Part shown: positions 11,397 to 46,982 of the stretch, piece by piece
Layout: every line of letters begins with the position of its first letter
Position numbering within the stretch: the stretch's first letter is position 1
From: Anolis carolinensis
Taxonomy: Eukaryota
Direction: 5' to 3'
NCBI RefSeq assembly: GCF_035594765.1
Contig: NC_085845.1
Span: forward strand, 70,364,024-70,428,023
DNA length: 64,000 nt
Notes under the pieces: generated by a model
Database searches by the model: none
Seen by the model: the letters and a program-made list of their open reading frames with translations, nothing else
What the model was told of the DNA's origin: nothing
Position numbers and translations under genes: made by a program

Positions 11397-12540
11397 CTAG
11401 CATGGGACCCGGCGGTGCCCGGGTCATTTGAGAAAGGCATTATTTGTCTTTGAATGTTATGTATTCTGTTTGGAGTGGGTGAACTACAATTCCCAGAATC
11501 GTGGGTCAATCCTCCCCAAACCCTGCCAGTATTCAAAGTTGGCCATTTTGGGTCTGTGTACCAAGTCTGGTCCTGATCTGTCATTGACTGGTCATTGCCT
11601 GACTGCAGAGCTCTCTGGATGGGGGTGAAGTACTACAACTCCCAGATTCCAGGGCAATTGTCGCGAAACATCTGTCAGTATCCACAGTAGGCTATGCTGA
11701 GTCAGTGTGCCAAGTTTGGTCCAGATCCGTCGTTGGCTGGGTTCAGTGCTCTTTGGATACATGTGAACTACAACTCCCAAAATCAAGGCCCATTCCCATA
11801 AACCCCTGTAGTATGTTCAGTTGGTCATGAGGCTTCTCTGTGCAAAGTGTGGTTTTGGTCCATCATCGGTGGGGTTCAATTGCAGGTGAACTATACATCC
11901 CAGTACCTACTACTCCCAAATGTCCAGGCCAATTCTCCTCTAAACCCACCAGTATTCAAATCTGGGCATATCGGGTATGCAGTGCAAGTTTGGTCCAGAC
12001 CCATCATTGTCTGGGTTCATAGCGTTCTGGGTGTAGGTGAACTACAACTCCTCTAAATTCCCCAGTAGGAGTCACAGTGCTCTGACTGGATGCAGGCTGA
12101 ACTACAACTTCCACCATGTGGAGTCAATCCCCCAAACTCCTCCTTTGCTGTGTTTGTTCTGCAGACAGATTTGAAAGGGAAGGGCAGTAGGCAGGGTCAT
12201 GCAAATTTCACACCATTGGAGAACCCTGGGATGCCTGCCTGTGGTGGAGGACAATGCAAAATCTAGGATGAAATGGTCCCCAAATGAAAGCATTCCTTGG
12301 GTGGTGGGCCATAGTGTTTGGGGAGGACATTGGCAGGGGTTGGGATACATGTTCATGGCACTCGCTGTAACTGCAATGTCAGTGGAAAAGAGTGACTTGC
12401 TGGCTCCTCAGCACTGGGAATTGTAGCCTGTTTGTGGAGGCTGTCTGTGTAAACGGACACATACACACATACGGGTTTTTGCTTTTATCATGGATATAAA
12501 TAAATATAAATATATAAATATAAATAGATATAGATATAGA
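11397..12540 (-). mobile_element. non-autonomous Helitron, unit 3
   Basis: 5' A|TCTATATC at 12540; 3' hairpin GACCCGG-GCACCG-CCGGGTC then CTAG; homologous to the copy at 60703-63148. Confidence 0.8.
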
Positions 12541-27503: not shown

Positions 27504-28700
27504 AACATGCAAACACTGCTTTAGAGAGTGGGACATGGCATCTGCCATATGAATTGCAGTCTCTTTTCTGTCAATTGAACTAAAGTATCTAATTTTCTTT
27601 TATAATATTGACAATTGAATTTTTCATGATACAAACCAAGCTGAATGCATCCAGTGACAATCAGGGTTAATCCTACCATCAGGCAGAGTGAGAAAGTGAC
27701 ATTGACAACCTCCTGCCTATTCCTCCCAAATCTTCACCACTACTCAGCGTCAGAGTTGAGCACATCCCAATCTATTCTGGGGGCCCTTCATAGCCTGCTG
27801 CTCCATGTGTATTCAGGGACACTATCTCATCACCAGTGTTGCAGTAATATCCGCTATTTTATATGTGGTTGTGAAGCACACTATCTTTCTACCTAGGTCC
27901 AGAGTTTAGAAGTAATTTGTTTTGCCTTACATCATCCAGAATCTGCAAGCCAACACTGCCAGCTACCTTTATGGTTGGAAGTTTCTGGAGAGTTTCATAC
28001 TAAAAAGTAAATTTATCAAGTTTACGTGTCAGACCAGTCCTGATGGGAGAAATCTATGAAGACTGCTGTGGCTATTATCTCTTCCCATTCCCCTGATGTT
28101 CACTAGTGAGCAAAAAATATCTGTGGAGAAAGACATTCTACAGAAATCATTCTTTAAGTGCTTAACCATCTTTCCTAAATAAGATTCCAGCACAAGCAAA
28201 GAAGCCAATATGTTCACCTCCAGTGCAAATCTAATGGCGCTAGTGCCATTAGTCTCCTGATTCAAATTACTGTGTTACTTGTCACTGAAAAGGGCAAGAA
28301 TATGTTTATGGCTCCTCTTTGCTAAATTAAAAAATCATTCTGAGAAGGAACTTACACTCTTGCTCTTTGTGACAGATGAAAAGGAGTCTTATATTGAAAA
28401 GGGGAGGAAATATCTATAACCAAATTACATTTAAATCTGAGGTGAGTGTTCAGGTCAAGCAAGGCTGCTTTAGTGCTAAGTCCAGGCCTGATGCCAGAGT
28501 GAAATTGATCAAATCATTCAATTAGCCTATAATTGGGTGGCCACCATCTCTCAATCCTTTTGCTCAGAAAAGGGTATGTTCCAAACAATGTGATATTTAT
28601 TAGTCCTGATCCAGGAAGGTCCTGGATTTCACCAATTCTTCCAGTGCATGTGTTCTGTGTTTTCAAGATTCCAATTTATGGTGACCTTAAAGCAACTCAC

Positions 28701-29030
28701 TGTAGTAGTTGAGCCTTTGATTGTGCCTGCACCTGAAGTCAATGGCGATTCTGGTCCTGCAGACCAGTCTGGTGTTGCTGGGGATTCAGCACCAGCAAAA
28801 CAGCAGGATTGTCATCAAGAGATTTTAAGTCAGGAAACTGAGCAGTCTCATCCTGAAACCCACATTCCAGACAGACTGTTTGTAAGGGAATCAAGGTTGG
28901 AGTCAGAGATGGGCTCAGAGGATGAACTATTGGGTGTTCCCCTTAATGGGCAGTTAGAGAGAAGATTTATGTTTCATCAACATAGAGCAGTGCAGCAGAG
29001 TTTGCTAAGGTCAAACCGCCTATTAGCCAA
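28701..29030 (+). mobile_element. 5' part of a Gypsy-type LTR, truncated by the telomeric tract
   Basis: starts TGTAG; open frame from nt 2 ending RRFMFHQHRAVQQSLLRSNRLLAKR, same phase and motif as the ORFs in the two complete solo LTRs. Confidence 0.55.
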
Positions 29031-29121
29031 AAGGTTTAAGGTTTAGGGTTAAGGTTAGAGTTAGGTTTAGAGTTAGGGTTTAGGGATTAGGGTTTAGGGG
29101 TTAGGGGTTAGGGTTAGGGTT
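29031..29121 (+). repeat. interstitial telomeric (TTAGGG)n-like tract, left part
   Basis: GGTTAG/GGGTTA variants, becoming canonical next to the retroelement. Confidence 0.92.
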
Positions 29122-29367
29122 AGGTATAAGTAATATTTTTTTTTTAGGTATAAGTAATTTTTATTATAATAAATACGTACTACAAACACATTTGCTGACA
29201 ATTACAATCCAAAACAATCAAAGAAGAAATGCTAAATTTTACAATGCTTGCAACAATAAAAAAAATTCTTTACAGTTACATGACCGAATTTTGTCTTTGT
29301 TCACATTTTCCTTATTCTTTGGTTTCAATTACAAGTACAAATACATATACACATCTCAGTTATTATA

Positions 29368-30276
29368 TGTCAGGACCCAGGCTGCAGAGCACCAATAACC
29401 ATACGCAGAGGCCAGAATCTATCTAATATCTTTATTAAAGAATTATATAAAGTCAATAAAACCAAGTGTAGAATATAGTCCAGAAGTAGACCTTTCAGGA
29501 AAGGTCAAATATAGTCCAGGAAAACAATGTCCAATATATGATATTAAAGTCCAAAGTTATAATCCACTTCACCGAAACACACACTATTTGGCAAGCAATA
29601 GTGTGGGGAACTGTCCATAGTCTTTGAGGCTCAAGGTAAATCCGAAGAAAGGGAAAACAAGGCTGGAATCCGAGAAGCAGGGTCCGTGGTTTAAAAAGCA
29701 AGGCAAGGCAAGACTTGAGACTTGGCAAGGTCCAACTTGAAACAAGGCAATCGTGGAACAAGAACTGAGTCCATAGAAATCCGTGGAACAAGGCAGGGCT
29801 GGGAACTTGATTCAGGAGCTGGGAACTGGGGTACGAAGTCTACACACGATCTCACTCCACGAGCTGACGAATTGACTCCGCAAGGATTCCTTTGTGGCCA
29901 AACACCTATATAGGATCTTGTTTTCCCGCCAAAGCACACTTTCTCTGGGGAACAAGAATCGAAACCTATACTGTGTCCAGATGCAGGACTCCTTAAACTT
30001 TCCCAAGGGAAACAGACTTAATCATCTAATTGTCTGGCAGCTATCCTGGCGCTTCGGCGAGTCACCTCCCGAGCGCTTCTATCTTGATTATAATAAAGGC
30101 GGCGAGAAAATGGGGGAGATTTCTGCTCAAGGCTTGTTTGGCTGACTTCTTGTGGGCAAACATCCTGCAGCTGCAAGGGCTCCAAATCCGGCAGAAACGG
30201 TGGGAAACCCAAGTTTTCCTCTTCATCTGTCACAACAGTACTAGGAACGGGACTACATGGCCCATGAGTCATCACA
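29368..30276 (-). mobile_element. solo LTR (Gypsy-type) inserted in the Tx1 3' UTR
   Basis: TG..CA termini, perfect 5-bp TSD TTATA (29363-29367, 30277-30281); homologous to 22485-23349. Confidence 0.92.
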
Positions 30277-30336
30277 TTATATGTCAAACTGTTTTGTATT
30301 TATTATTGCTATCTATATATTCTAACTGGAAACACT

Positions 30337-31107
30337 TTAGGTGATCCCAGGCGTTGTCTCTGCCAGCCAGGGCCAGAACTTCTTCCATTGGCTAGAAGGC
30401 ATCCTGCCTCGTTCCGCTTTACTCAGGGCTCCTATTTCCCCTGCTACCCAATTCACACTAGACCTAACCGTTGCTGCCTTTTGAGTTGCTATTTCTCTGT
30501 TTCTTTGGAAAACCAGGGCCATGAGAACATACAAATTGATCAACCTTGTCGTTGACCAAGGAACATCCCAAAAAGCCTCCCGGGTGTCCCCTTGCTGTCC
30601 CCTCTTCCTTTTCCTGCCGTGGTGTCGTCGTGGACCCCGGATCCCGCCCTCCGGTTCCAGTCCAGAGGCCACCGCCTCCCAAGGCTGAAGCGCCAAGTCA
30701 GGCCAGTCAAAAGTGACAGCCACCTTTTGCCAGGTCTCTTTGGCTGAAGGGCACTCCCTGACAAAATGCTCAATGGTCTCCCTAGGCTTGCTTCCGGTGA
30801 CACAGGCATGTTCCTGGCAGAGAAGTCTGGGACAAAATTGTTCTTCTTCTTTCAGCCACGGTCGGTTGCCCTTCAAAAAGTATATTTGATGGTAAAACCT
30901 CCATCGAATGTCCCACAGACCAAAGGGAATCCTCCGGTCCATGAAATATTCTATTTTTTCTGGTGTTTCTTTTAAATAATTTGACAAATATTCTTTTCGG
31001 GCATTTTTTTCCATCTGTGGCTGAAAGAAAACCACGTCCAGTAAACCATCTCCCAGTAAACAAACTGCTTCAGGTTCTTTATGACCCCTCTCTGAGCCCG
31101 GAACCAC
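30337..31107 (-). pseudogene. Tx1 ORF2 C-terminal part (zf-RVT-type CCHC), separated from the RT by a frameshift
   Basis: CPRLLC...ETIEHFVRECP motif, typical of the L1/Tx1 ORF2 C-terminus. Confidence 0.85.
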
Positions 31108-31136
31108 TCTGCCAGTACTTTATTTTGTTGGATCTG

Positions 31137-34133
31137 TCAATAGACTTCTATCAGGAAATCAGGCCCAGCATGCTTTATGGCGGCTGTCACTTGAAAAGGC
31201 ACCGGTTTCTCCCCCCACTTCTCTGCCCAGCTTTCGTTGACCCAATGCTTTGCGAAAAGGGCAAGCCATCCCTCCAAGCCATCCTCTTGGAGAATCCCTT
31301 GGCCATATTTTCCAAAATTCTGGCCAAGGAAAATAGCCAAAAACTTCAGACGCAAAGCTGGTAAATCGAGGCCTGCTTGGGTCGTCTTCCTATAGGCCAC
31401 CGCCCTGGCCAGAGGGAAATTGGCTGTTCCCCACACAAAACGGAAAACCAGTTTCTCTGCTTCCTTTAAGACTTTCTGGGGGGGAGGGTAGACCATGGCC
31501 AAATTTAAGGCCAGGGGCATGATATAAGTCTTCACGTACACAGCCTTTTGGTAAACATTTAGTCGCCATGGTTTACATTTATCAAAATATTCTTTGATCT
31601 TTTTTAGCCAAAGATGCCAATTCTTTTCCCATCCAGAAGGTTTAATTGAAAACCATAAACCTAAAATTTTACACTCCTCTAGTCTCTCTAGCGTTTGGTT
31701 TTCTTGTTGAGTTTGTTTACTCGCTGTTACCACCTCCACCGGAGATAAACACAAGGTTCCCTTTTCCCTAACGAAAGAAATCAAACGGCTTTTCTGCAAA
31801 TTAATCTGGGCCCCAGAAACTTGTTGATATCCACCCAAGGTGGTCATGACCGAGGCTATCTCTTCCCGGTTATTGACAAAAAAGGAGATGTCATCTGCAT
31901 GGGCCGCATATTTAACTCGTTTCACAGCAACATCTGCAAGGAGCAGCGTGATTTCCCCTCCGAGGGAGGGAACCCTCAAGCCAGTGATATTTTCCTTAGC
32001 CTGGATCTGACAGAGAACCATATCTAAGACTAAAACGTAGAGGAGGGGGCTGATCGAATTCAACCTGATCGGAGCCCCTCTGTGCCCATTGATCTGAGGG
32101 GTTACCTGAGCCTTAGAATACATAAGCTGTATAAACTTCACAAAGTGGAGGGGAAGCCCTTTCCTGGCCAAGGCTTCCCACATGAATCCATGATGGACTC
32201 GGTCAAAAGCTTTGGTTTGGTCCAGTGAGAGTATTCCCCCTTTCCATTCACCTCGTTGGGCCAAATAAAACACCTCCCTAAACAAACACAAAGAGTCCAA
32301 CATGGAACGCCCCGGAACTGCACTGGTTTGAGGGCCCAGGATAATTTTTGGTGCTAACTTTGCTAATCTATTGTTTAAAACTTTGGCTACAATTCTGTAG
32401 TCTACATTTGTCAAAACTATAGGCCGCCAGTTTTGAGGTAAAGTCAAATCTCCTTGTTTAGGAAAGAAAATCAAATCACCTTGATAAAAAGAGTCCGTCA
32501 GGTTATCCCTAGACAAGAGTTGGTTGATCACTCGGGTGAGAGGGGGAACCAGCCATTTAGCGAAGGTCTTATAGAAAATCCACCAGAGCCCATCCGGACC
32601 CGGAGCGGACTTTGTCTTTCCCTGGAATATCACCTGCCAGATTTCTTCCTCCATCACAGGGGCCACCAAATCCTCTCTGTCCTGTTGGGTCAGGCCTTCG
32701 CACATGCTCTCTAATAGGTTTTGGGGTGCCTTATTGAAGAAACTCTCAATGTCATCTTTGTGTATTGCTTTCTTTGAATGCAGATCCCCGTAAAAGCCCT
32801 CCATCACTTTCAACATGCTTTTTGGGTCGGCTTCCACGGGATCCCCTTCGCAACGTCTCAATCCTTCCATTGATATCGAGGAACAGGGAGTTTTGGCACC
32901 AGCCCACTCTTCCACATCCACCACCGCCCCTTTTGTCCTAAATTCTTTGTAATTTTTGCGTTTCAATTTCTGACGGAGTTGAAAATTTTGAATGACTGTT
33001 CGAGACAGCTTAAGTACCTGTTCGTTTACCGGGAGCCCCTGATTAACGTTTTGATGACATTTTAGAAAATCATAGACTGCTTGTTGGTAACGTTGGAGGT
33101 CTTTTCTATTGATTACGTATTCATAATTTTGGCAGGTCTTCCTAATGACTCTTTTTGCTCTCTCCCACCACTCTGGCAGTTCAGAGGCGTAAAGGTCCTC
33201 CAAAGTCATCATGTTTGCCACAACTGACGCGATCTCCTCCTTACAGGCCATATTGTCGATCGTCTTTGGGCGAAGCCTCCAAAGGGGTTTCCCTCTGGGA
33301 CGAACTTCCCCCAAAGCGAGTTGGACTTCGAGCATGGCGTGGTCTGACCACGGGGTGACTGTCAGTCGGCAGCTCGAGCTCTTTAATTCTGCAGGGGCTC
33401 TGATCCTATCTAATCTACTGGCTCTGTTTTTTTGATACCAAGTGAACTTCCCACTTCCCTGAGGTCCATATTGTTCTATAAATGCTTTTTTACATGGAAG
33501 GGGGACAAAATTCAATTGATTGGTGACTTCCAAGGCCTTGTCTTTCAAACTTCGGTCTGTAAGGAAGCTCTCGAGGAGTCTTTCTTCAGGGGTTAATGGG
33601 TTTAACTTTTTCCCACTGCAGTCTTTCTCAATATAGGTGGAATAATCTGCCAATTTGCTCCTGTTGTTAAAGTCCCCAGCGATCAATAAGGATCTGTGAG
33701 TGGAGCAGTACCCTTTCAGGTGGACCCAAAATTTCCTTCGTTGCGATGCCACAACACGGGCATATAAACCACAAAGACGAAATGCCCTTTTCTCTTTTTC
33801 CCCATCCTTTGAGAGCTCTAGCAAAGTAAAGTCCACAATCAGAAGCCTGCCGGGTAAAGCTTCTAGGACAAAGTCCACGCTCAAGTCCCGCCTAGCCTTG
33901 ATCAAAACTGCCACCCCGGCCTGATGTTCCTCTCCGTAAGACCAAAAGGACGGTCCTTTTGTCCACAGTCTTTGCACCCGGGAGCGTTGCTGCTCGCTTA
34001 CCAGGTGAGTTTCCTGCAGGATCACAATGTCCTGCAGCCCCGTTGCCAACAATGGAAGGATCTCATTCTGCCTAGCAGCCATCCTCAGGCCTCTCACGTT
34101 CCATGTGGTAATTGTCAGGGAAACCATGATCAA
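31137..34133 (-). pseudogene. Tx1 ORF2: APE endonuclease + reverse transcriptase (first ATG 34127), damaged
   Basis: APE motifs TWNVRG, LQETH, GDFN, SRLDR, SDH; RT motifs KSAPGPDG, WRPI.L.N.DY, LDQ.KAFDRV.H, HADD; the QG motif is missing. Confidence 0.95.
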
Positions 34134-34306
34134 GTGGCATTAAAGGACTCAAAACCTGCCCTGTTGATACTATTGAAAAAAACTATTGAGAAAACTATAG
34201 TTATTCTTAACTGCAAGATTACACAAAAAAAATTCCAAAATGAAAAAAAGTATCTGATTTTCCCTCCAAAACAAGTTTAACGTTAAGATTTTGACTTTGT
34301 TTATGT

Positions 34307-35240
34307 TTAATATTGGCCTTCTAGTTCTGACCGAATCTTTTCTACCCCCTCCGGAGAAACCGAAGGTGTAGCCTCACAGATTTGGGATAGGAATAAGGAT
34401 GGGAGCGATGGGGAAGGAGGGAATGGGGGAATGGGGTTCATAGGGATGGGGGAAGGGGGAGAGTGATCATGGGCGAGGGAGGGAGGGTGGTCAGGGGGAG
34501 GGAGCAAGGTAGGGCATCAGGGGGACCAGGGTAGGGAGGGGGAGGGAAAGGAGGGAAAGGTCTGTCTTCCCTTGCCTCTTTCCCAGTCTCCTGAGTAAAA
34601 CCTTCCGTTCCCGAGAACAACAAAGGCGAAACTCCACTAGGTGTCCCTTCAATTACAGTGCTTACTTGTATTGGTTCAGATGAAACCAGAGAAGTCTCCA
34701 CTGTTTGTTCTGCTGTTGTTACTACCTCTACCTCCCCTTTCTCTTTCTTCCTCTCATCCTCCTGCTTTTTTGCTTTATTCTTCTTCTTCTTCCTCTGTCT
34801 CTGTTCCTTCACCAAAAGACCCTCAATGTCTGCTCCCCTCTCCATCACCACAGCAGCCTCCAACATTTCCTCATTTGTCACTTCCTCCATTGGAAATCTG
34901 TCCTCTCCCCCACCAGCTTCCTCCCTTTCTGCCAATACCTGGAATCTGTTTATCTGCTCATTAGGGCCCCTTTCCTGCCCCTCCTCCTGGCCCCTCTCCT
35001 GCCTCCGGACCCCCTTCCCCTGCACCACGCTCCATTCGAGGTCCCCCGCCTCACTCTGGACATTTTCCATCGTAGGCTCTGAACCTTCTACTCCCTGTCT
35101 TTTTCTGGATGGCAAGTCCTCCCTCCTTGTCCTCAAGGCCTCCCTCAACACTCTGGTGTGCTCTCTGGCCTGGGCTCGTTCTTTCCCCGTTTTGGTGACA
35201 TGTTGGCCTTCTTGAAGACCCCCTTGTCCTGCTGGTTATA
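34307..35240 (-). pseudogene. frameshifted C-terminal continuation of ORF1 (acidic/basic, Pro-rich tail)
   Basis: 237-aa and 66-aa ORFs overlapping ORF1 in adjacent frames; W..V..K, NRF..L and KKKKNK motifs typical of disordered Tx1/L1 ORF1 tails. Confidence 0.7.
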
Positions 35241-36908
35241 ATATGCCTGGGGGCACCAGAAATAAGTATGACCTAAGTCACCACAAAAATTACACCTGAT
35301 GCTACTGTGGCAGGTTGCCGTGTGGTGGCCCCTGGTCCCGCACCGTGAGCACAAAGGGGAGGTGCAAAGGCGCCTCTGATGGTCATAAGAACCACACTGG
35401 AAACAGGCCTGCGGTTGACCAGCATACCTAGTGATCCCCCTATCTGCTCCTAAAAAGAAATATTTCGGGAGCTTCCCATGTCTGTACTCGGGATCCTCGT
35501 TCTTAAATGAGACCACACACCTATATTCCCCGGTCCAATAGCCCTGCTCATCCTCCTTCTTATCTGGCCCTGACAAAATGACAGCATATTTAGAAACCCA
35601 CCTAGCCACGTCTTGGGCAGGGATTGTGGTAGTTCTAAAACTTATGGTCAAAACTTTTGTGTCTCCCCTAAATAACGGAATCAGCTCATATTCTGCCAAA
35701 AGATCCGGCATCACACTTTTAACTGTTTTGCAGTTCATCCAGAAATCCCTATAGACCTTTTCGGAAGCGAGACAAACATCTATTTCTTTAGACCCCGGGA
35801 GCTGAATGATTGCTAACACATCTTCCCTGCTGGCCTCCAAAGCATCCTTCAGGAGTTTCTTTGAGAGATAACTCCTTGACCCTCTCTCTGGATCCGACCC
35901 TAGGTATCTGAAGCGTACCACATAACGCAATCTGGGGTTCCTCACCTCGGAAGCTTGGCCAAAGAAGAGGTCGAGATATTCCTCCTCTTCGATCAAGTTA
36001 GGAAAACCATAGGGACGTTGGCCAGGGTTCCCACCGCCCCTCCCCGCCACATTAGCATAGGTTCTCCCTCCCCGTTTCTGCTGTTGTGGTTTCGAAGAAC
36101 CTGGAGTTGCCTCCCCGTGAAACTCCCCCCCTCGTCTACGGTCACTTTCCCCTTTTTCTGAAAGTCCATCTAGACCAGACTTTTTACTAACATTAATCTC
36201 ACCCGCTCCTCCGTCAACCTCAAAGGCATGTCTAGTCCCATTGTCCATAGTCTCAGGCTCCTGGAGGAAACTCCTTTGTCTCAGTGTCAGTTCCTTTAGT
36301 GTTTCCTCAGTGTTCTTTGGGATGGAAATTAAGTACTTCATAGGGGGAAAAACCCCCAGGTCCGCAACATCCTCCAAAGCATTCCCACCAGCCACCCTGT
36401 CTGGAAGCATCGGACGAAATCCTTCCTTCCCAACACGTAAACCCTTTCCAGTGTTCCCAGCCACTGCCTCCAGTTCAGAGTCCACCTGATCTGCCCAGTC
36501 CCGTTCTCTTCTGGGCTTCTTCTTGGCACTTTTGGGAGTCCCGGCATCAAGGTCTGAACCACTGATATCACTAAGAGTCCCCCCTCTTTGCCTCACTTTC
36601 TCCTGGTTCTTTGTCCCCTGATCCTTGGGTCTGGCTCCCAAGGAAAGAGGAGTTGAGGTCAAAGATCCCGAATGGTTGTCCTCCACCCGGTTCTGTTCTC
36701 TTTCTCCACTCTGGATGCCTTTCTGGGATCCGCATCTTTCTTCTCCCCTCGGATCGAAGCCCAGCTGCTTGGAGATCTTCTGCCGTTGTCGTAGATCCGC
36801 CACAACGGTCAGAGCCACTCCATCAGAGCTTCTCTGGATACTATTTTGCTCGTGTTGTCCACTTGGGCCCAGACCAAAGGAGTCTGATTCTCGAGAGAAC
36901 ATTGCCAT
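35145..36908 (-). CDS. Tx1 ORF1 gag-like nucleic-acid-binding protein
   Basis: TYANVA motif, RRM-like region, three CX2CX4HX4C knuckles (CFQCGSYDHQRRLC, CSRCGTRGHHTATC, CNFCGDLGHTYFWC). Confidence 0.9.
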   Translation of the reverse strand: MAMFSRESDSFGLGPSGQHEQNSIQRSSDGVALTVVADLRQRQKISKQLGFDPRGEERCGSQKGIQSGEREQNRVEDNHSGSLTSTPLSLGARPKDQGTKNQEKVRQRGGTLSDISGSDLDAGTPKSAKKKPRRERDWADQVDSELEAVAGNTGKGLRVGKEGFRPMLPDRVAGGNALEDVADLGVFPPMKYLISIPKNTEETLKELTLRQRSFLQEPETMDNGTRHAFEVDGGAGEINVSKKSGLDGLSEKGESDRRRGGEFHGEATPGSSKPQQQKRGGRTYANVAGRGGGNPGQRPYGFPNLIEEEEYLDLFFGQASEVRNPRLRYVVRFRYLGSDPERGSRSYLSKKLLKDALEASREDVLAIIQLPGSKEIDVCLASEKVYRDFWMNCKTVKSVMPDLLAEYELIPLFRGDTKVLTISFRTTTIPAQDVARWVSKYAVILSGPDKKEDEQGYWTGEYRCVVSFKNEDPEYRHGKLPKYFFLGADRGITRYAGQPQACFQCGSYDHQRRLCTSPLCSRCGTRGHHTATCHSSIRCNFCGDLGHTYFWCPQAYYNQQDKGVFKKANMSPKRGKNEPRPESTPEC

Positions 36909-39124
36909 ATCCGGTAAATCTCTTGAAAAGTCTTAATCAACTGGGCCTCCGAAAGCCAATCGGGTAAAACGACGACAGAAGTCTTGGGCTTCCTGGCCAG
37001 GAGCAGGTGTTGGATAATCTCCAAGGACAAGGTTCGGGCATGAGCCACTTGTTTTTGGGACTGGGCCACTCTCAGACCCGAGAGGACAGCCTTTAAAACA
37101 GGAAAGCTCTTCTCCAGGATCCCCCAAAGTCGATCCCTGTTGTACTTCTTGAAATTTGGTAGGCGGTCCTGAGATGCCGGCAAGGCCAGGTGGGCCACCG
37201 CAAAGCCCCACAGCTTTAAAGTGTCATGCCTATGAAAATCTTTGGGCAAAATGATGTTGGTCACTTTACCCCAGTTGGTGTGCAGGCACTCTGTCCAGGC
37301 AGCCATAATCTGCCTCTCTCGGGAAAGGGTCTTGATCTGGGATGTCTCAGAAAGCACGGCTTCCGAATCAGCCACTTCCTCCTCCGCCATGCTTTGGAAA
37401 TCGGTGTCATATTGTCGTTTTAAAAATTCTTTAGTCACCAGCTTTTCTGGGTCTTCTTGCCCACCATCTTTCTCTTTTCGCTCTTCCTCACTGCTGCTTT
37501 CTGTAGAGCTCTGCAGGGAAGAGACACCAGACAGCTCCACGCCGCTCTTTCTTGGTAACTGAAAAGAAAGCCCTTCCATTTTCTCCTCCTCATCTTCTTC
37601 TTCAATTTCGGATGCTGAGGTGGAATTAATGGGATCTGAAAGCCCTCTAGGAGCCCCTTTCTGTGTGTCTGTTGGATCTTGCCTTTGTATCTCCCGGGAC
37701 GTTTCCTTTCTTTTAGACAAGGAAATAAGGGACCTTTCCTCTTCCGAGTCTTGCCTTGTTTTTAAAGGGGAGCGGTCACGATCCTCATTCAATGTCTCAA
37801 CCTGCAAGGGAGTTCCCATTTGGGATTTTTGCTGCCTAAGTTTTCTTGCCAAGTCTTCTTTATGTCTTTTAAATTGATTCAGGAGGACAGATTCCCTTTC
37901 AATATATCCCTTTATGTCTTTTATGAGTTCTGTATTGAATGAAGAAATACATTTTCTCTTTTCCCAAAAAGAATTATAGTCTTCCAAGGATCGTTGTTGG
38001 GCTGCTTTCAAAAGAAGGTTTATGCCTTCCTGTTTTAACTCTTGAGTAAATTCTTTAATCTGGTCAATGCCCAATTCCACTATGCTCCTGCTTTTTCTTA
38101 AACTTGAATCTTTTTGTAAAAAGTCTCTGAAGCCTGTTGATTCAGTCTCACGATCAGATAAATCAAAGTCCTCAGGGATTAATTTTAAGGATTCCTGTAG
38201 TTTACTTATATCCAAATTAAATGTTTTATTTTCCATGTCCTCATAAAAGAAAGTTTGCAGAAATTGCTCTGCCTGGGCTTGAGTTTTCCTCTTCTCCTCC
38301 TCCTGCCCCCCTGTTTCCATGGTTACTGGGTGAGTCAAGAAAAGGGATTCTACTTTCGTTTTTGCTGCTTTTGTTTGCTTAATGGCTTTTGTAGCCCCCT
38401 TCTCCCTGCTTTTAGAGAAAAGTACTGGTGTTTTAAACATAACAGAAGTCTCTCCTTTATCAGAGTCAACATGTAAAGCCTTTTGCATTAAATCTACAGC
38501 CATTCCTTCTGTTTCTGTCCCAATATGGAGTGTTTGGGGCATGGCCTCTACTCCTGCTGCTTGGCTCCATGAGGGAAAAGTTTGTCTTTCAAGCATTTGC
38601 AAATATTCTCTTTTCCCCAGCTGGCTATTGCTGCTAGAATTAACATTCAAATCTTTATCTATAACATTTGGCTCATGTTTATCTTGAGTTTGCATCAAGT
38701 TTGATTTGTCTTTTAAAAATCTTTCCTTTCCTATTGTAGTCTGGGGTGTTTTCCCCCCCACTCCAGGCTTTCTTCCTTCTTCTAACAATTCAAACTCTTT
38801 TCTGAAAACTTTATCAACTACTTTGACACCTTGAGAAGTTACCCTTGGTGTCTCTTTTATTCTCAAACTGTTTTCTTTTACAGTTGCAGGTTTCAAAGTA
38901 CTCACAGACTGTGTGCAAGCTGCTGCTGGTGTTTCAGGAGTCTGAGCCTCCATTTTGTCCATAATGGCTGCAGGCTGGGAAGGGGGCTGTGTCTGAAAGC
39001 CCACAAAGTCCCCAAAATCATCCTTTTGGGGGTCCACACTTGCACCTCCTGATGCCAGAAAGGTTCCCATGCCCTCTCCAATCATTGGAGAGGCAGCATC
39101 TTCAGCGGGTTCCAAGTTATCCAC
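36809..39124 (-). CDS. extra upstream ORF of the Tx1 element (771 aa, unknown function; possibly an N-terminal extension of ORF1)
   Basis: 2.3-kb open frame inside the element boundaries; charged/coiled-coil-like middle, acidic Ser-rich block, Trp-containing helical-looking C-terminal ~170 aa; first ATG at 39085. Confidence 0.75.
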   Translation of the reverse strand: MDNLEPAEDAASPMIGEGMGTFLASGGASVDPQKDDFGDFVGFQTQPPSQPAAIMDKMEAQTPETPAAACTQSVSTLKPATVKENSLRIKETPRVTSQGVKVVDKVFRKEFELLEEGRKPGVGGKTPQTTIGKERFLKDKSNLMQTQDKHEPNVIDKDLNVNSSSNSQLGKREYLQMLERQTFPSWSQAAGVEAMPQTLHIGTETEGMAVDLMQKALHVDSDKGETSVMFKTPVLFSKSREKGATKAIKQTKAAKTKVESLFLTHPVTMETGGQEEEKRKTQAQAEQFLQTFFYEDMENKTFNLDISKLQESLKLIPEDFDLSDRETESTGFRDFLQKDSSLRKSRSIVELGIDQIKEFTQELKQEGINLLLKAAQQRSLEDYNSFWEKRKCISSFNTELIKDIKGYIERESVLLNQFKRHKEDLARKLRQQKSQMGTPLQVETLNEDRDRSPLKTRQDSEEERSLISLSKRKETSREIQRQDPTDTQKGAPRGLSDPINSTSASEIEEEDEEEKMEGLSFQLPRKSGVELSGVSSLQSSTESSSEEERKEKDGGQEDPEKLVTKEFLKRQYDTDFQSMAEEEVADSEAVLSETSQIKTLSRERQIMAAWTECLHTNWGKVTNIILPKDFHRHDTLKLWGFAVAHLALPASQDRLPNFKKYNRDRLWGILEKSFPVLKAVLSGLRVAQSQKQVAHARTLSLEIIQHLLLARKPKTSVVVLPDWLSEAQLIKTFQEIYRIWQCSLENQTPLVWAQVDNTSKIVSREALMEWL

Positions 39125-39176
39125 TGTTTTGCCACCAGCCTCTGAGGAGCTGCAGAAAGCGAAACTGCCTCCTCCA

Positions 39177-39263
39177 AGGGTTAGGGTTAGGGTTAGGGTT
39201 CAGTTAGGGTTAGCATTCAGTTAGGGTTAGCGTTAGGGTTAAGGTTTGTGTTGCATTAGGGTT
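39177..39263 (+). repeat. interstitial telomeric (TTAGGG)n-like tract, right part
   Basis: four perfect AGGGTT units (39177-39200), then degenerate variants. Confidence 0.92.
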
Positions 39264-40080
39264 AGGTAGACCACGGCCAAATTTAAGGCCAGGGGCATGA
39301 TATAAGTCTTCATGTACACAGCCTTTTGGTAATCATTTAGTCGCCATGGTTCCCATTTATCAAAATATTCTTTGATCTTTTTTAGTCAAAGATGCCAATT
39401 CTTTTCCCATCCAGAAGGTTTAATTGAAAACCTAAAATTTTACACTCCTCTAGTCTCTCTAGCCTCCGGTGGCTCAGTGTGTTAAAGCGCTGAGCTACTG
39501 AACTTGCAGACCGAAAAGTCCCAGGTTCAAACCCAGAGAGCGGAGTGAGCACCCGCTGTTAGCTCCAGTTCCTGCCAACCTAGCAGTTCGAAAATATGCA
39601 AAGGTACCGCGGGAAGGTAACGGCGGGAAGGTAACGGCGTTCCATACAGTCATGACCTTGGAGGTGTCTACGGACAACGGCAGCTCTTTGGCTTAGAAAT
39701 GGAGATGAGCACCAACCCCCCAGAGTCGGACACGACTGGACTTAACGTCAGGGGAAACCTAGTCTCTCTAGCACTTGGTTTTCTTGTCGAGTTTGTTTAC
39801 TTGTTGTTACCACCTCCACCGGAGATAAATACAAGGTTCCCTTTTCTCTAGCGAAAGAGATCAAACAGCTTTTCTGCAAATTAATCTGGATCCCAGAAAC
39901 TTACTGATATCCACCCAAGGCGGTCATGACTGAGGCTATCTCTTCCCGGTTATTGACAAAGAAGGAGGACGCATATTTAACTCATTTCACAGTAACATCT
40001 GCAAGGAGAGGCGTGATTCCAGCTCCGAGAGAGGGAATTTTCCTTAGCCTGGATCTGACAGAGAACCGTATCTAAAACTA
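39264..40080 (-). mobile_element. second, internal fragment of the same Tx1 family (RT region)
   Basis: collinear with ~31487-32032 with substitutions and deletions; interrupted by a SINE. Confidence 0.92.
39464..39758 (+). mobile_element. Sauria-type SINE inserted in the second Tx1 fragment
   Basis: 14-bp TSD CTAGTCTCTCTAGC (39450-39463, 39759-39772), present only once in the long Tx1 copy. Confidence 0.93.
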
Positions 40081-46852: not shown

Positions 46853-46982
46853 NNNNNNNNNNNNNNNNNNNNNNNNNNNNNNNNNNNNNNNNNNNNNNNN
46901 NNNNNNNNNNNNNNNNNNNNNNNNNNNNNNNNNNNNNNNNNNNNNNNNNNNNNNNNNNNNNNNNNNNNNNNNNNNNNNNNNN
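46853..46982. other. assembly gap
   Basis: run of N. Confidence 1.

What the first reader, a model, noticed from the sequence alone, without database searches (positions are those of the whole stretch)
29111..39200. Both junctions restore the telomeric register: insertion at GGGTT^AGGG
Seen: the left junction is ...GGGTTAGGGTT(29121)|AGGTATAAG and the right junction is ...CCTCCA(39176)|AGGGTTAGGG. Removing the element gives an uninterrupted GGGTT-AGGGTT, so any TSD would be 0 or a multiple of 6 nt. Known: APE endonucleases of L1 (T/A step) and TRAS1 (TT^AGG) nick between T and A. Inference: this endonuclease nicks the G-strand at TT^AGGG, and the TT-3'OH primes on the RNA poly(A). It could be a natural endonuclease specific for the vertebrate telomeric repeat.
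Basis: partly seen in the sequence, partly recalled or inferred. Interest (0 to 1): 0.75.

Follow-up and report, generated by a model that had tools for sequence, protein, structure and literature searches.

The report
Known telomere-repeat-targeting lizard LINE; nick site unresolved
A 10-kb jumping gene of the green anole sits precisely inside a short internal stretch of telomere repeats, as this already-described telomere-specific family does, but the sequence alone cannot tell which bond of TTAGGG its nuclease cuts.

Summary
The junction letters and coordinates are exact, and removing 29122-39176 restores the TTAGGG register.

The element lies on the minus strand. It is an L1-group (Tx1-type) non-LTR retrotransposon of Anolis carolinensis with ORF0, ORF1 (two RNA-binding domains plus CCHC knuckles) and ORF2 (APE nuclease plus RT).

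Targeting of telomere repeats is well supported:
- An independent copy on another chromosome region (L003) is also flanked by degenerate CCCTAA repeats. It has the same orientation and the same 3' junction phase.
- A second fragment of the family abuts the same 180-bp tract in the window.

The mechanistic detail is only partly supported:
- The element's last three letters equal the next telomeric letters. The nick can therefore be at any of four bonds (TT^A^G^G^G), and a duplication of 0-3 nt fits equally well.
- No A-run lies at the junction, so "TT primes on poly(A)" is not shown.
- If the RNA reads through into the repeats, the phase is inherited from the donor and says nothing about the nick.

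The window copy itself is defective. The scan noted this stretch before. Modest interest.

The parts
29032..29121 (+). Left half of the interstitial telomeric tract. It is G-strand on +, degenerate away from the element, and the last ~2.8 units are perfect.
29122..39176 (-). Tx1-type (L1-group) non-LTR retrotransposon, sense strand = minus. 10,055 bp, of which ~0.9 kb is a later nested insertion.
29122..29165 (-). 3' terminus: a 13-nt motif ending ACCT, then A10 and T, then the same motif, then the target. AATAAA lies 14 nt upstream of the first ACCT. There is no A-run at the junction itself.
   Evidence: (D10)
29373..30275 (.). Nested foreign repeat inside the 3' UTR with an 11-bp target duplication. 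It is absent from the L003 copy and 72% similar to window 22484-23349 on the other strand.
30337..31107 (-). C-terminal part of ORF2 (CCHC-like motif region). In this copy it is cut off from the rest by an in-frame stop and a frame change.
31137..34133 (-). ORF2: APE endonuclease plus reverse transcriptase (998 aa open). It lacks 7 residues in a conserved RT motif compared with another anole copy (P0021).
33339..34127 (-). APE-type endonuclease domain. All catalytic residues are present. There is a P-to-R change next to the catalytic Tyr in this copy, and a lizard-lineage insertion between the GDFNN and FTWY motifs.
35145..36908 (-). ORF1: two ZCCHC3-type RNA-binding domains and three CCHC knuckles.
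36809..39124 (-). ORF0 (771 aa open; first ATG at 39085, 91 nt from the 5' end). No known domain. The last ~170 aa are conserved in Varanus.
39177..39266 (+). Right half of the telomeric tract. The first four units are perfect, then it degenerates with a 17-nt period.
39265..40080 (-). Older 5'- and 3'-truncated fragment of the same family, equivalent to 31487-32032 of the full copy and interrupted by a SINE at 39463-39759. Its 3' end joins the tract at an internal telomere-like site. Its 5' end joins unique DNA.

Best explanation
The element is a copy, now defective, of the telomere-repeat-specific Tx1-type LINE family of Anolis carolinensis. It entered a short interstitial (TTAGGG)n tract by target-primed reverse transcription. 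Its APE nuclease nicked the G strand somewhere within TT^A^G^G^G. The freed G-strand 3' end was positioned on the RNA at the boundary between the conserved terminal ...ACCU and the following A residues, which together mimic five of the six letters of the C-strand unit. cDNA synthesis started there, so the junction carries no A-tail and always reads ACCT then AACCCTAA. Second-strand cleavage 0-3 nt away on the C strand left the register intact. Shown here: element anatomy, orientation, repeated targeting, constant phase, intact catalytic residues. Inferred: that the EN rather than RNA annealing sets the site, and the exact bond.
For: Anatomy: APE + RT ORF2, and ORF1 with RNA-binding domains + CCHC. 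ORF2 is closest to human L1 ORF2p among solved structures (E 5e-57). The EN model (pLDDT 75) is closest to L1 EN (E 5e-16). Host: 97% identity to A. carolinensis proteins. Targeting: the independent copy L003 (90% identical, unrelated flanks) has degenerate CCCTAA repeats on both sides, the same orientation and the same 3' phase. A second fragment hits the same 180-bp tract. Terminal ACCT is conserved in the Varanus relative. All EN catalytic residues are conserved in Anolis, Varanus and a third relative. Literature: Tx1-1_ACar was described as telomere-specific by Kojima & Jurka 2013, cited in PMC10088271 and PMC5537684. TRAS1 EN nicks TT^AGG, and SART1 can initiate internally at telomere-like RNA sites (PMC7265360).
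Against: Only three anole insertions could be examined. The Repbase consensus could not be compared, so identity with Tx1-1_ACar is by host, type and target only. No biochemical data exist for this EN. The Varanus relatives (50-54% aa identity) lie in a 159-bp satellite, not in telomere arrays, so telomere targeting is not shown for the wider lineage. Register continuity alone is a 1/6 event.
Confidence: 0.8

Rival explanations
1. The phase is inherited, not cut. Transcripts read through the weak 3' end into the downstream (CCCUAA)n of the donor. This RNA tail anneals in register to the nicked G strand, as proposed for R1, R2 and SART1. Every new copy then shows the donor's junction and a restored register, wherever in the repeat the nuclease cut.
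For: The second motif copy lies downstream of the AATAAA-plus-A-run, yet it is present in all three 3' ends seen. That is simplest if the RNA extends past the A-run. There is no A-tail at the junction. Both copies have an identical junction. Annealing of telomere-like RNA to the target is documented for SART1 (PMC7265360).
Against: A canonical AATAAA 14 nt before the first ACCT followed by A10 suggests polyadenylation there. The two motif copies are identical within a species but differ at 5 of 13 positions between Anolis and Varanus. This points to regeneration at each cycle rather than passive inheritance. No RNA data are available.
Confidence: 0.3
2. Nuclease-independent end addition. The G-strand overhang of a real or broken chromosome end primed on the RNA, as in HeT-A/TART or endonuclease-independent L1 at dysfunctional telomeres. 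Telomerase then added repeats beyond the 5' end, and the structure was later internalised.
For: The orientation (A-rich 3' end towards the upstream G strand) is what end-priming would give. The repeats are perfect right next to both junctions and degenerate farther away, and the two halves carry different variant patterns: period 13 on the left, 17 on the right. Another note of this scan reports telomeric repeats at a LINE junction in this genome (untested).
Against: The repeat register is continuous across the element (1/6 by chance under this model). The APE domain keeps all catalytic residues across lizard lineages. Both loci are interstitial: L003 is at 251 Mb of a 369-Mb chromosome, and the window's sequence piece runs on for more than 60 Mb beyond the window. 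The model needs two separate internalisations, and two hits landed in one 180-bp tract.
Confidence: 0.08
3. Chance: an ordinary LINE that happened to land in an interstitial telomeric tract.
For: None beyond the single locus taken alone.
Against: Three events at two loci are all in telomere-like repeats, with the same orientation and the same phase. The tract is about 0.3% of this window. There is a published description of the family as telomere-specific.
Confidence: 0.01

Closest known systems
Tx1-1_ACar, telomere-specific Tx1 non-LTR retrotransposon of the green anole (Kojima & Jurka, Repbase Reports 2013;13:843, as cited in PMC10088271 and PMC5537684)
   Same: Same host species, same element type (APE+RT, L1-like/Tx1), same target ((TTAGGG)n). 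This is most probably the same family or a sister subfamily.
   Different: I could not compare with the Repbase consensus. The window copy and the L003 copy differ by 10-20% in DNA and may represent two subfamilies. The cited papers give no nick site, no junction phase and no biochemical data.
TRAS1 (and SART1) of Bombyx mori, R1 clade, specific for (TTAGG)n
   Same: APE-type LINE inserted in telomeric repeats in a fixed orientation and phase. TRAS1 has the same orientation (3' end joined to the C strand, G strand as primer), and its EN nicks TT^AGG. SART1 shows internal initiation at telomere-like RNA sites, like the fragment at 39265.
   Different: A different clade. The ORF2 and the EN model are closest to L1. 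TRAS1 and R1 EN did not appear in the sequence search or in the top 50 fold matches, so the specificity arose independently. TRAS1 and SART1 junctions carry a poly(A) tail; here none is present at the junction. An extra ORF0 is present here.
Tx1L of Xenopus and other target-specific Tx1-clade elements (Keno, Mutsu, Kibi, Koshi)
   Same: APE+RT ORF2, ORF1 with RNA-binding domains and CCHC knuckles, insertion at one position of a repeated target.
   Different: Different targets (a DNA transposon, snRNA and 5S genes, microsatellites). No reference sequences were on hand for a tree.
Human L1
   Same: Closest solved ORF2p and EN structures. TPRT primed from a T-rich 3' end at a T/A step.
   Different: L1 has loose target choice (TTTT/A), a variable poly(A) at the junction, 7-20 bp duplications, and a different ORF1 type.

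Membership tests
Tx1 clade of non-LTR retrotransposons (L1 group) | ORF2 with an N-terminal APE endonuclease followed by RT | tested here: met
   Pfam Exo_endo_phos aa 10-265 and RVT_1 aa 558-826. EN fold model pLDDT 75, best match L1 EN.
Tx1 clade of non-LTR retrotransposons (L1 group) | ORF1 with RNA-binding (RRM-like) domains plus CCHC zinc knuckles | tested here: met
   PF23057 and PF23058 at E 1e-21 and 5e-17. Three CCHC knuckles are visible in the translation.
Tx1 clade of non-LTR retrotransposons (L1 group) | RT groups with Tx1L and relatives in a phylogeny | not testable with these tools
   No named Tx1 reference sequences were available. Only L1-group affinity is shown: human L1 ORF2p E 5e-57 against R2 at 3e-19.
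Tx1 clade of non-LTR retrotransposons (L1 group) | Sequence-specific insertion at one position of a repeated target | tested here: met
   Three of three anole insertions are in telomere-like repeats with one orientation. Two of two complete 3' ends share a phase.
Tx1-1_ACar (Repbase) | Sequence identity with the Repbase consensus | not testable with these tools
   Repbase is not on hand. The match rests on host, element type and target only.
TRAS/SART (R1 clade) | EN and RT related to the R1 clade | tested here: not met
   No TRAS1 or R1Bm EN appeared among the PDB sequence hits up to E 10 or among the top 50 fold matches. L1 was best throughout.
HeT-A/TART-type end-adding telomeric elements | Addition to chromosome ends without target cleavage, in head-to-tail arrays with no flanking repeat continuity | tested here: not met
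   Telomeric repeats lie on both sides in continuous register. The APE catalytic residues are intact. The loci are interstitial.

The most novel reading that the evidence does not exclude
The element's 3' end is built to imitate the telomeric C strand: the conserved ...ACCU plus the first two A residues. The G-strand end is therefore placed by base pairing, much as telomerase aligns its template. In addition, the [motif]-A(n)-[motif] terminus is rebuilt at every insertion by a programmed back-jump of the RT from the short internal A-run onto the poly(A) tail. Register and phase would then be set by the RNA, with the nuclease needing only loose specificity. The Varanus relatives would have retargeted the same machinery to a satellite.
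Probability: 0.25. Interest if true: 0.5.

Novelty: already known. Interest (0 to 1): 0.3.

Why it matters
A LINE nuclease that naturally recognises the vertebrate repeat TTAGGG would be a useful reagent. So far, telomere cutting has relied on the insect TRAS1 EN fused to TRF1 (PMC2868851). It would also be a second, independent origin of telomere targeting among APE-type LINEs. The existence and target of this anole family are already on record. What the present work adds is modest:
- a second locus with the same phase;
- the caveat that the junction cannot fix the cleaved bond;
- the absence of an A-tail at the junction;
- a conserved duplicated 3' terminus that constrains models of how reverse transcription starts.

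Tried and rejected
- **Exact look-ups.** Look-ups of the anole UniRef models P0001 and P0021 found no contigs. Only P0022 gave a second anole locus.
- **ORF0.** There was no Pfam hit even at E 1 and no Atlas hit. The AlphaFold model of the conserved C-terminal domain had pLDDT 45 and was not searched.
- **Atlas search with ORF2.** It gave only unnamed APE+RT clusters, which were no use for naming the clade.
- **Single-event idea.** I considered that the whole block (tract, element, tract, fragment) was inserted as one unit. No flanking duplication is seen in the unique DNA, and the fragment is more diverged, so I treat them as two events.
- **Duplicate-locus idea.** I considered that the L003 and window copies are duplicates of one locus. 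I rejected this because the flanks are unrelated, the truncation points differ and the nested repeat is absent from L003.
- I did not run the large representative search, because the claim does not rest on absence of relatives.
Full report
**1. The observation**

- On the + strand the left tract ends ...GGGTTAGGGTT at 29121 and is followed by AGGTATAAG.
- The element ends ...CCTCCA at 39176 and is followed by AGGGTTAGGG.
- Perfect TTAGGG dimers start at 29108 on the left and at 39181 and 39187 on the right.
- With 10,055 bases removed, the offset is 18, a multiple of six, so the register is restored.

Telomere-like 12-mers occur nowhere else in the 64-kb window: 10 matches against 0.32 expected, none of 100 shuffles. 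The two tracts, 29032-29121 and 39177-39266, are perfect next to the element and degenerate away from it.

Two qualifications apply.
- Register continuity alone has a prior of 1 in 6.
- Bases 29122-29124 (AGG) are at once the complement of the element's last three letters and the next letters of the telomeric unit. A duplication of 0, 1, 2 or 3 nt restores the register equally well.

**2. What the element is**

It lies on the minus strand, running from 39176 down to 29122.
- **ORF0.** 771 aa open, first ATG at 39085, which is 91 nt from the 5' end. It has no known domain. Its last ~170 residues are conserved at 36% in Varanus.
- **ORF1.** ATG at 36908, overlapping the end of ORF0 in another frame. 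It carries two ZCCHC3-type RNA-binding domains and three CCHC knuckles. An NCBI model from another copy ends at the same ORF0 stop (P0026), so the ORF0/ORF1 overlap is probably native.
- **ORF2.** APE nuclease plus RT.

Among solved structures ORF2 is closest to human L1 ORF2p (E 5e-57, against R2 at about 1e-19). The EN domain alone finds L1 EN but not TRAS1 or R1Bm EN. An AlphaFold model of the EN (pLDDT 75, pTM 0.78) matches L1 EN best (E 5e-16), with no TRAS1 EN in the top 50. All APE catalytic residues are present in Anolis, Varanus and a third relative. The lizard lineage also carries an insertion of some 25-60 residues between the GDFNN and FTWY motifs, which the model predicts poorly.

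The host is Anolis carolinensis. ORF2 is 97% identical to three anole UniRef proteins.

**3. State of this copy**

The window copy is defective. Compared with the 1269-aa ORF2 of another anole copy (P0021):
- it lacks seven residues in a conserved RT motif;
- it has an in-frame stop at 31134-31136;
- it changes frame before the C-terminal part at 30337-31107;
- it has a P-to-R change next to the catalytic tyrosine of the EN.

About 0.9 kb of its 3' UTR (about 29373-30275) is a later nested insertion with an 11-bp duplication. This insertion is absent from the L003 copy.

**4. Is telomere targeting real?**

Yes, on three events.

(a) *An independent second copy.* The NCBI anole protein P0022 led to locus L003, at chromosome CM069367.1 around 251.06 Mb. 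It holds a 5'-truncated copy, 90% identical to the window element over window 31701-30276 and 80% over the last 250 bases, 29372-29122. Its unique flanks are unrelated to those of the window. It is flanked by about 390 bp and about 175 bp of degenerate CCCTAA repeats in the same orientation. Its 3' junction reads ...ACCT then AATCCTAACCC. This is the same phase as the window copy, which reads ...ACCT then AACCCTAACCC.

(b) *A second hit on the same tract.* Immediately right of the window's tract lies an older fragment of the same family, 39265-40080. It equals 31487-32032 of the full copy and carries a SINE inside. Its 3' end joins the repeats at an internal site where the parent sequence reads ...CTACCCTCC. 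The fragment reads ...CTACC then TAACCCTAA. Its 5' end joins unique DNA. Internal initiation at telomere-like RNA sites is documented for SART1 (PMC7265360).

(c) *The full copy itself.*

Chance insertion is excluded for practical purposes.

**5. It is already known**

[quoted passage not shown] They list Tx1-1_ACar among elements that insert into telomeric repeats (PMC10088271; PMC5537684). I could not compare with the Repbase consensus, so identity rests on host, type and target.

This scan had also noted the same stretch, its 3' duplication and the fragment on this same window.

**6. The nick site**

The G strand is the primer strand. The + strand runs from telomeric G-strand letters straight into the antisense of the element's 3' end. 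Beyond that, the sequence does not fix the bond.
- Because of the AGG overlap, the nick may be TT^AGGG, TTA^GGG, TTAG^GG or TTAGG^G. The C-strand cut is then 0-3 nt away.
- The terminal ACCT belongs to the element. It is conserved in the Varanus relative, whose flank is a satellite. It recurs in the internal copy of the motif, followed by A residues.
- ACCU plus the first two A residues matches five of the six letters of the C-strand unit and could pair with a primer ending ...TTAGG.
- The fragment junction needs no further change if the primer ended in ...TTA...TTAG or ...TTAGG. Under TT^AGGG it needs the loss of one G. This is weak evidence, because the fragment is old.

**7. Priming on poly(A) is not what the sequence shows**

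In both anole 3' ends there is no A-run at the junction. The A-run (10 and 7 residues) lies 13-14 nt inside, between two copies of a 13-nt motif. AATAAA lies 14 nt before the first ACCT.

The Varanus element has the same architecture with a different motif and 13 A residues. The two motif copies are identical or differ by one letter within a species. They differ at 5 of 13 positions between species. The duplication is therefore a family feature, regenerated or homogenised, and not a one-off false start.

A simple model follows. Priming occurs at the ACCU/A boundary. The 13-nt motif is copied up to the short internal A-run. The T-ended cDNA then slips back onto the poly(A) tail. This model is inferred, not shown.

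The alternative is that transcripts read through into downstream repeats and anneal in register. In that case the junction phase is copied from the donor and carries no information about the nick (rival 1).

**8. Other rivals**

End-priming at a chromosome end or break, followed by telomerase healing, would give the same orientation. It would also explain the perfect repeats next to both junctions. However, it predicts register continuity only 1 time in 6, makes the conserved APE domain superfluous, and needs two internalisations.

**9. Relatives**

Varanus komodoensis has two copies at 50-54% protein identity on one contig, L001. They are embedded in a 159-bp satellite. Copy B is preceded by 176-bp repeats that contain short CCCTAA dimers, and the element starts with CCCTAC-like letters. 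The one available 3' junction is with the satellite, not with a telomere array.

A third relative at 39% (L002, from a Logan contig) does not reach its 3' end. Telomere targeting is therefore shown only for the anole family.

**10. Verdict**

The general reading, a vertebrate telomere-repeat-specific LINE primed from the G strand, is supported but already published. The specific claims are not established by sequence and need the assays listed: cleavage exactly at TT^AGGG, priming of TT on poly(A), and specificity residing in the EN.

**Limits of this work**
- Only three anole insertions were examined.
- There is no named Tx1 reference for a tree.

Noticed in passing
window 29122-29165; L003 11349-11383; L001 11418-11458: The 3' terminus has the form [13-nt motif ending ACCT]-A(n)-[same motif]-target in both anole copies and in the Varanus relative. 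The motif differs between species at 5 of 13 positions, but its two copies are (nearly) identical within a species. The duplication therefore looks regenerated or homogenised at retrotransposition rather than being a single frozen false start.
   Followed up: partly
window 29373-30275 (and 22484-23349): A ~0.9-kb unrelated repeat is nested in the element's 3' UTR with an 11-bp target duplication. It is absent from the L003 copy. A 72%-similar copy lies at 22484-23349 on the other strand.
   Followed up: partly
window 36809-39124 (-): An ORF0 of 771 aa lies upstream of ORF1, which is unusual for a LINE. The last ~170 aa are conserved in Varanus (36%). There is no Pfam or Atlas match, and the AlphaFold model was unusable (pLDDT 45). 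It is a candidate for a targeting or chromatin-binding role, but this is untested.
   Followed up: partly
L001 (Varanus komodoensis SJPD01000766.1) 1-2011, 11455-14361, 17100-21008, 21412-22178: The two Varanus copies (96.7% identical) sit in a 159-bp satellite, with about 45 bp of the satellite unit missing at the insertion of copy A. Copy B is preceded by 176-bp tandem repeats that each contain a CCCTAACCCTAA core. Both copies start with CCCTAC-like letters.
   Followed up: partly
window 33339-34127 (-): The EN of the lizard lineage carries an insertion of roughly 25-60 residues between the GDFNN and FTWY motifs, relative to more distant relatives and L1 EN. The model predicts it with low confidence. 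It may lie on the DNA-binding face.
   Followed up: no
window 34446-34547: G-rich 22-23-nt tandem repeats (GGGAGGG type on the + strand, antisense to the element) lie between ORF1 and ORF2. These are quadruplex-like motifs of the kind discussed for telomeric retrotransposons in PMC10088271.
   Followed up: no
window 28648-29046 (+): An open frame of 132 aa runs up to the left edge of the telomeric tract. It has no Pfam match, and whether it is a host exon is unknown.
   Followed up: no
window 46853-46982: A run of 130 N (assembly gap or masked). I left it as it is.
   Followed up: no
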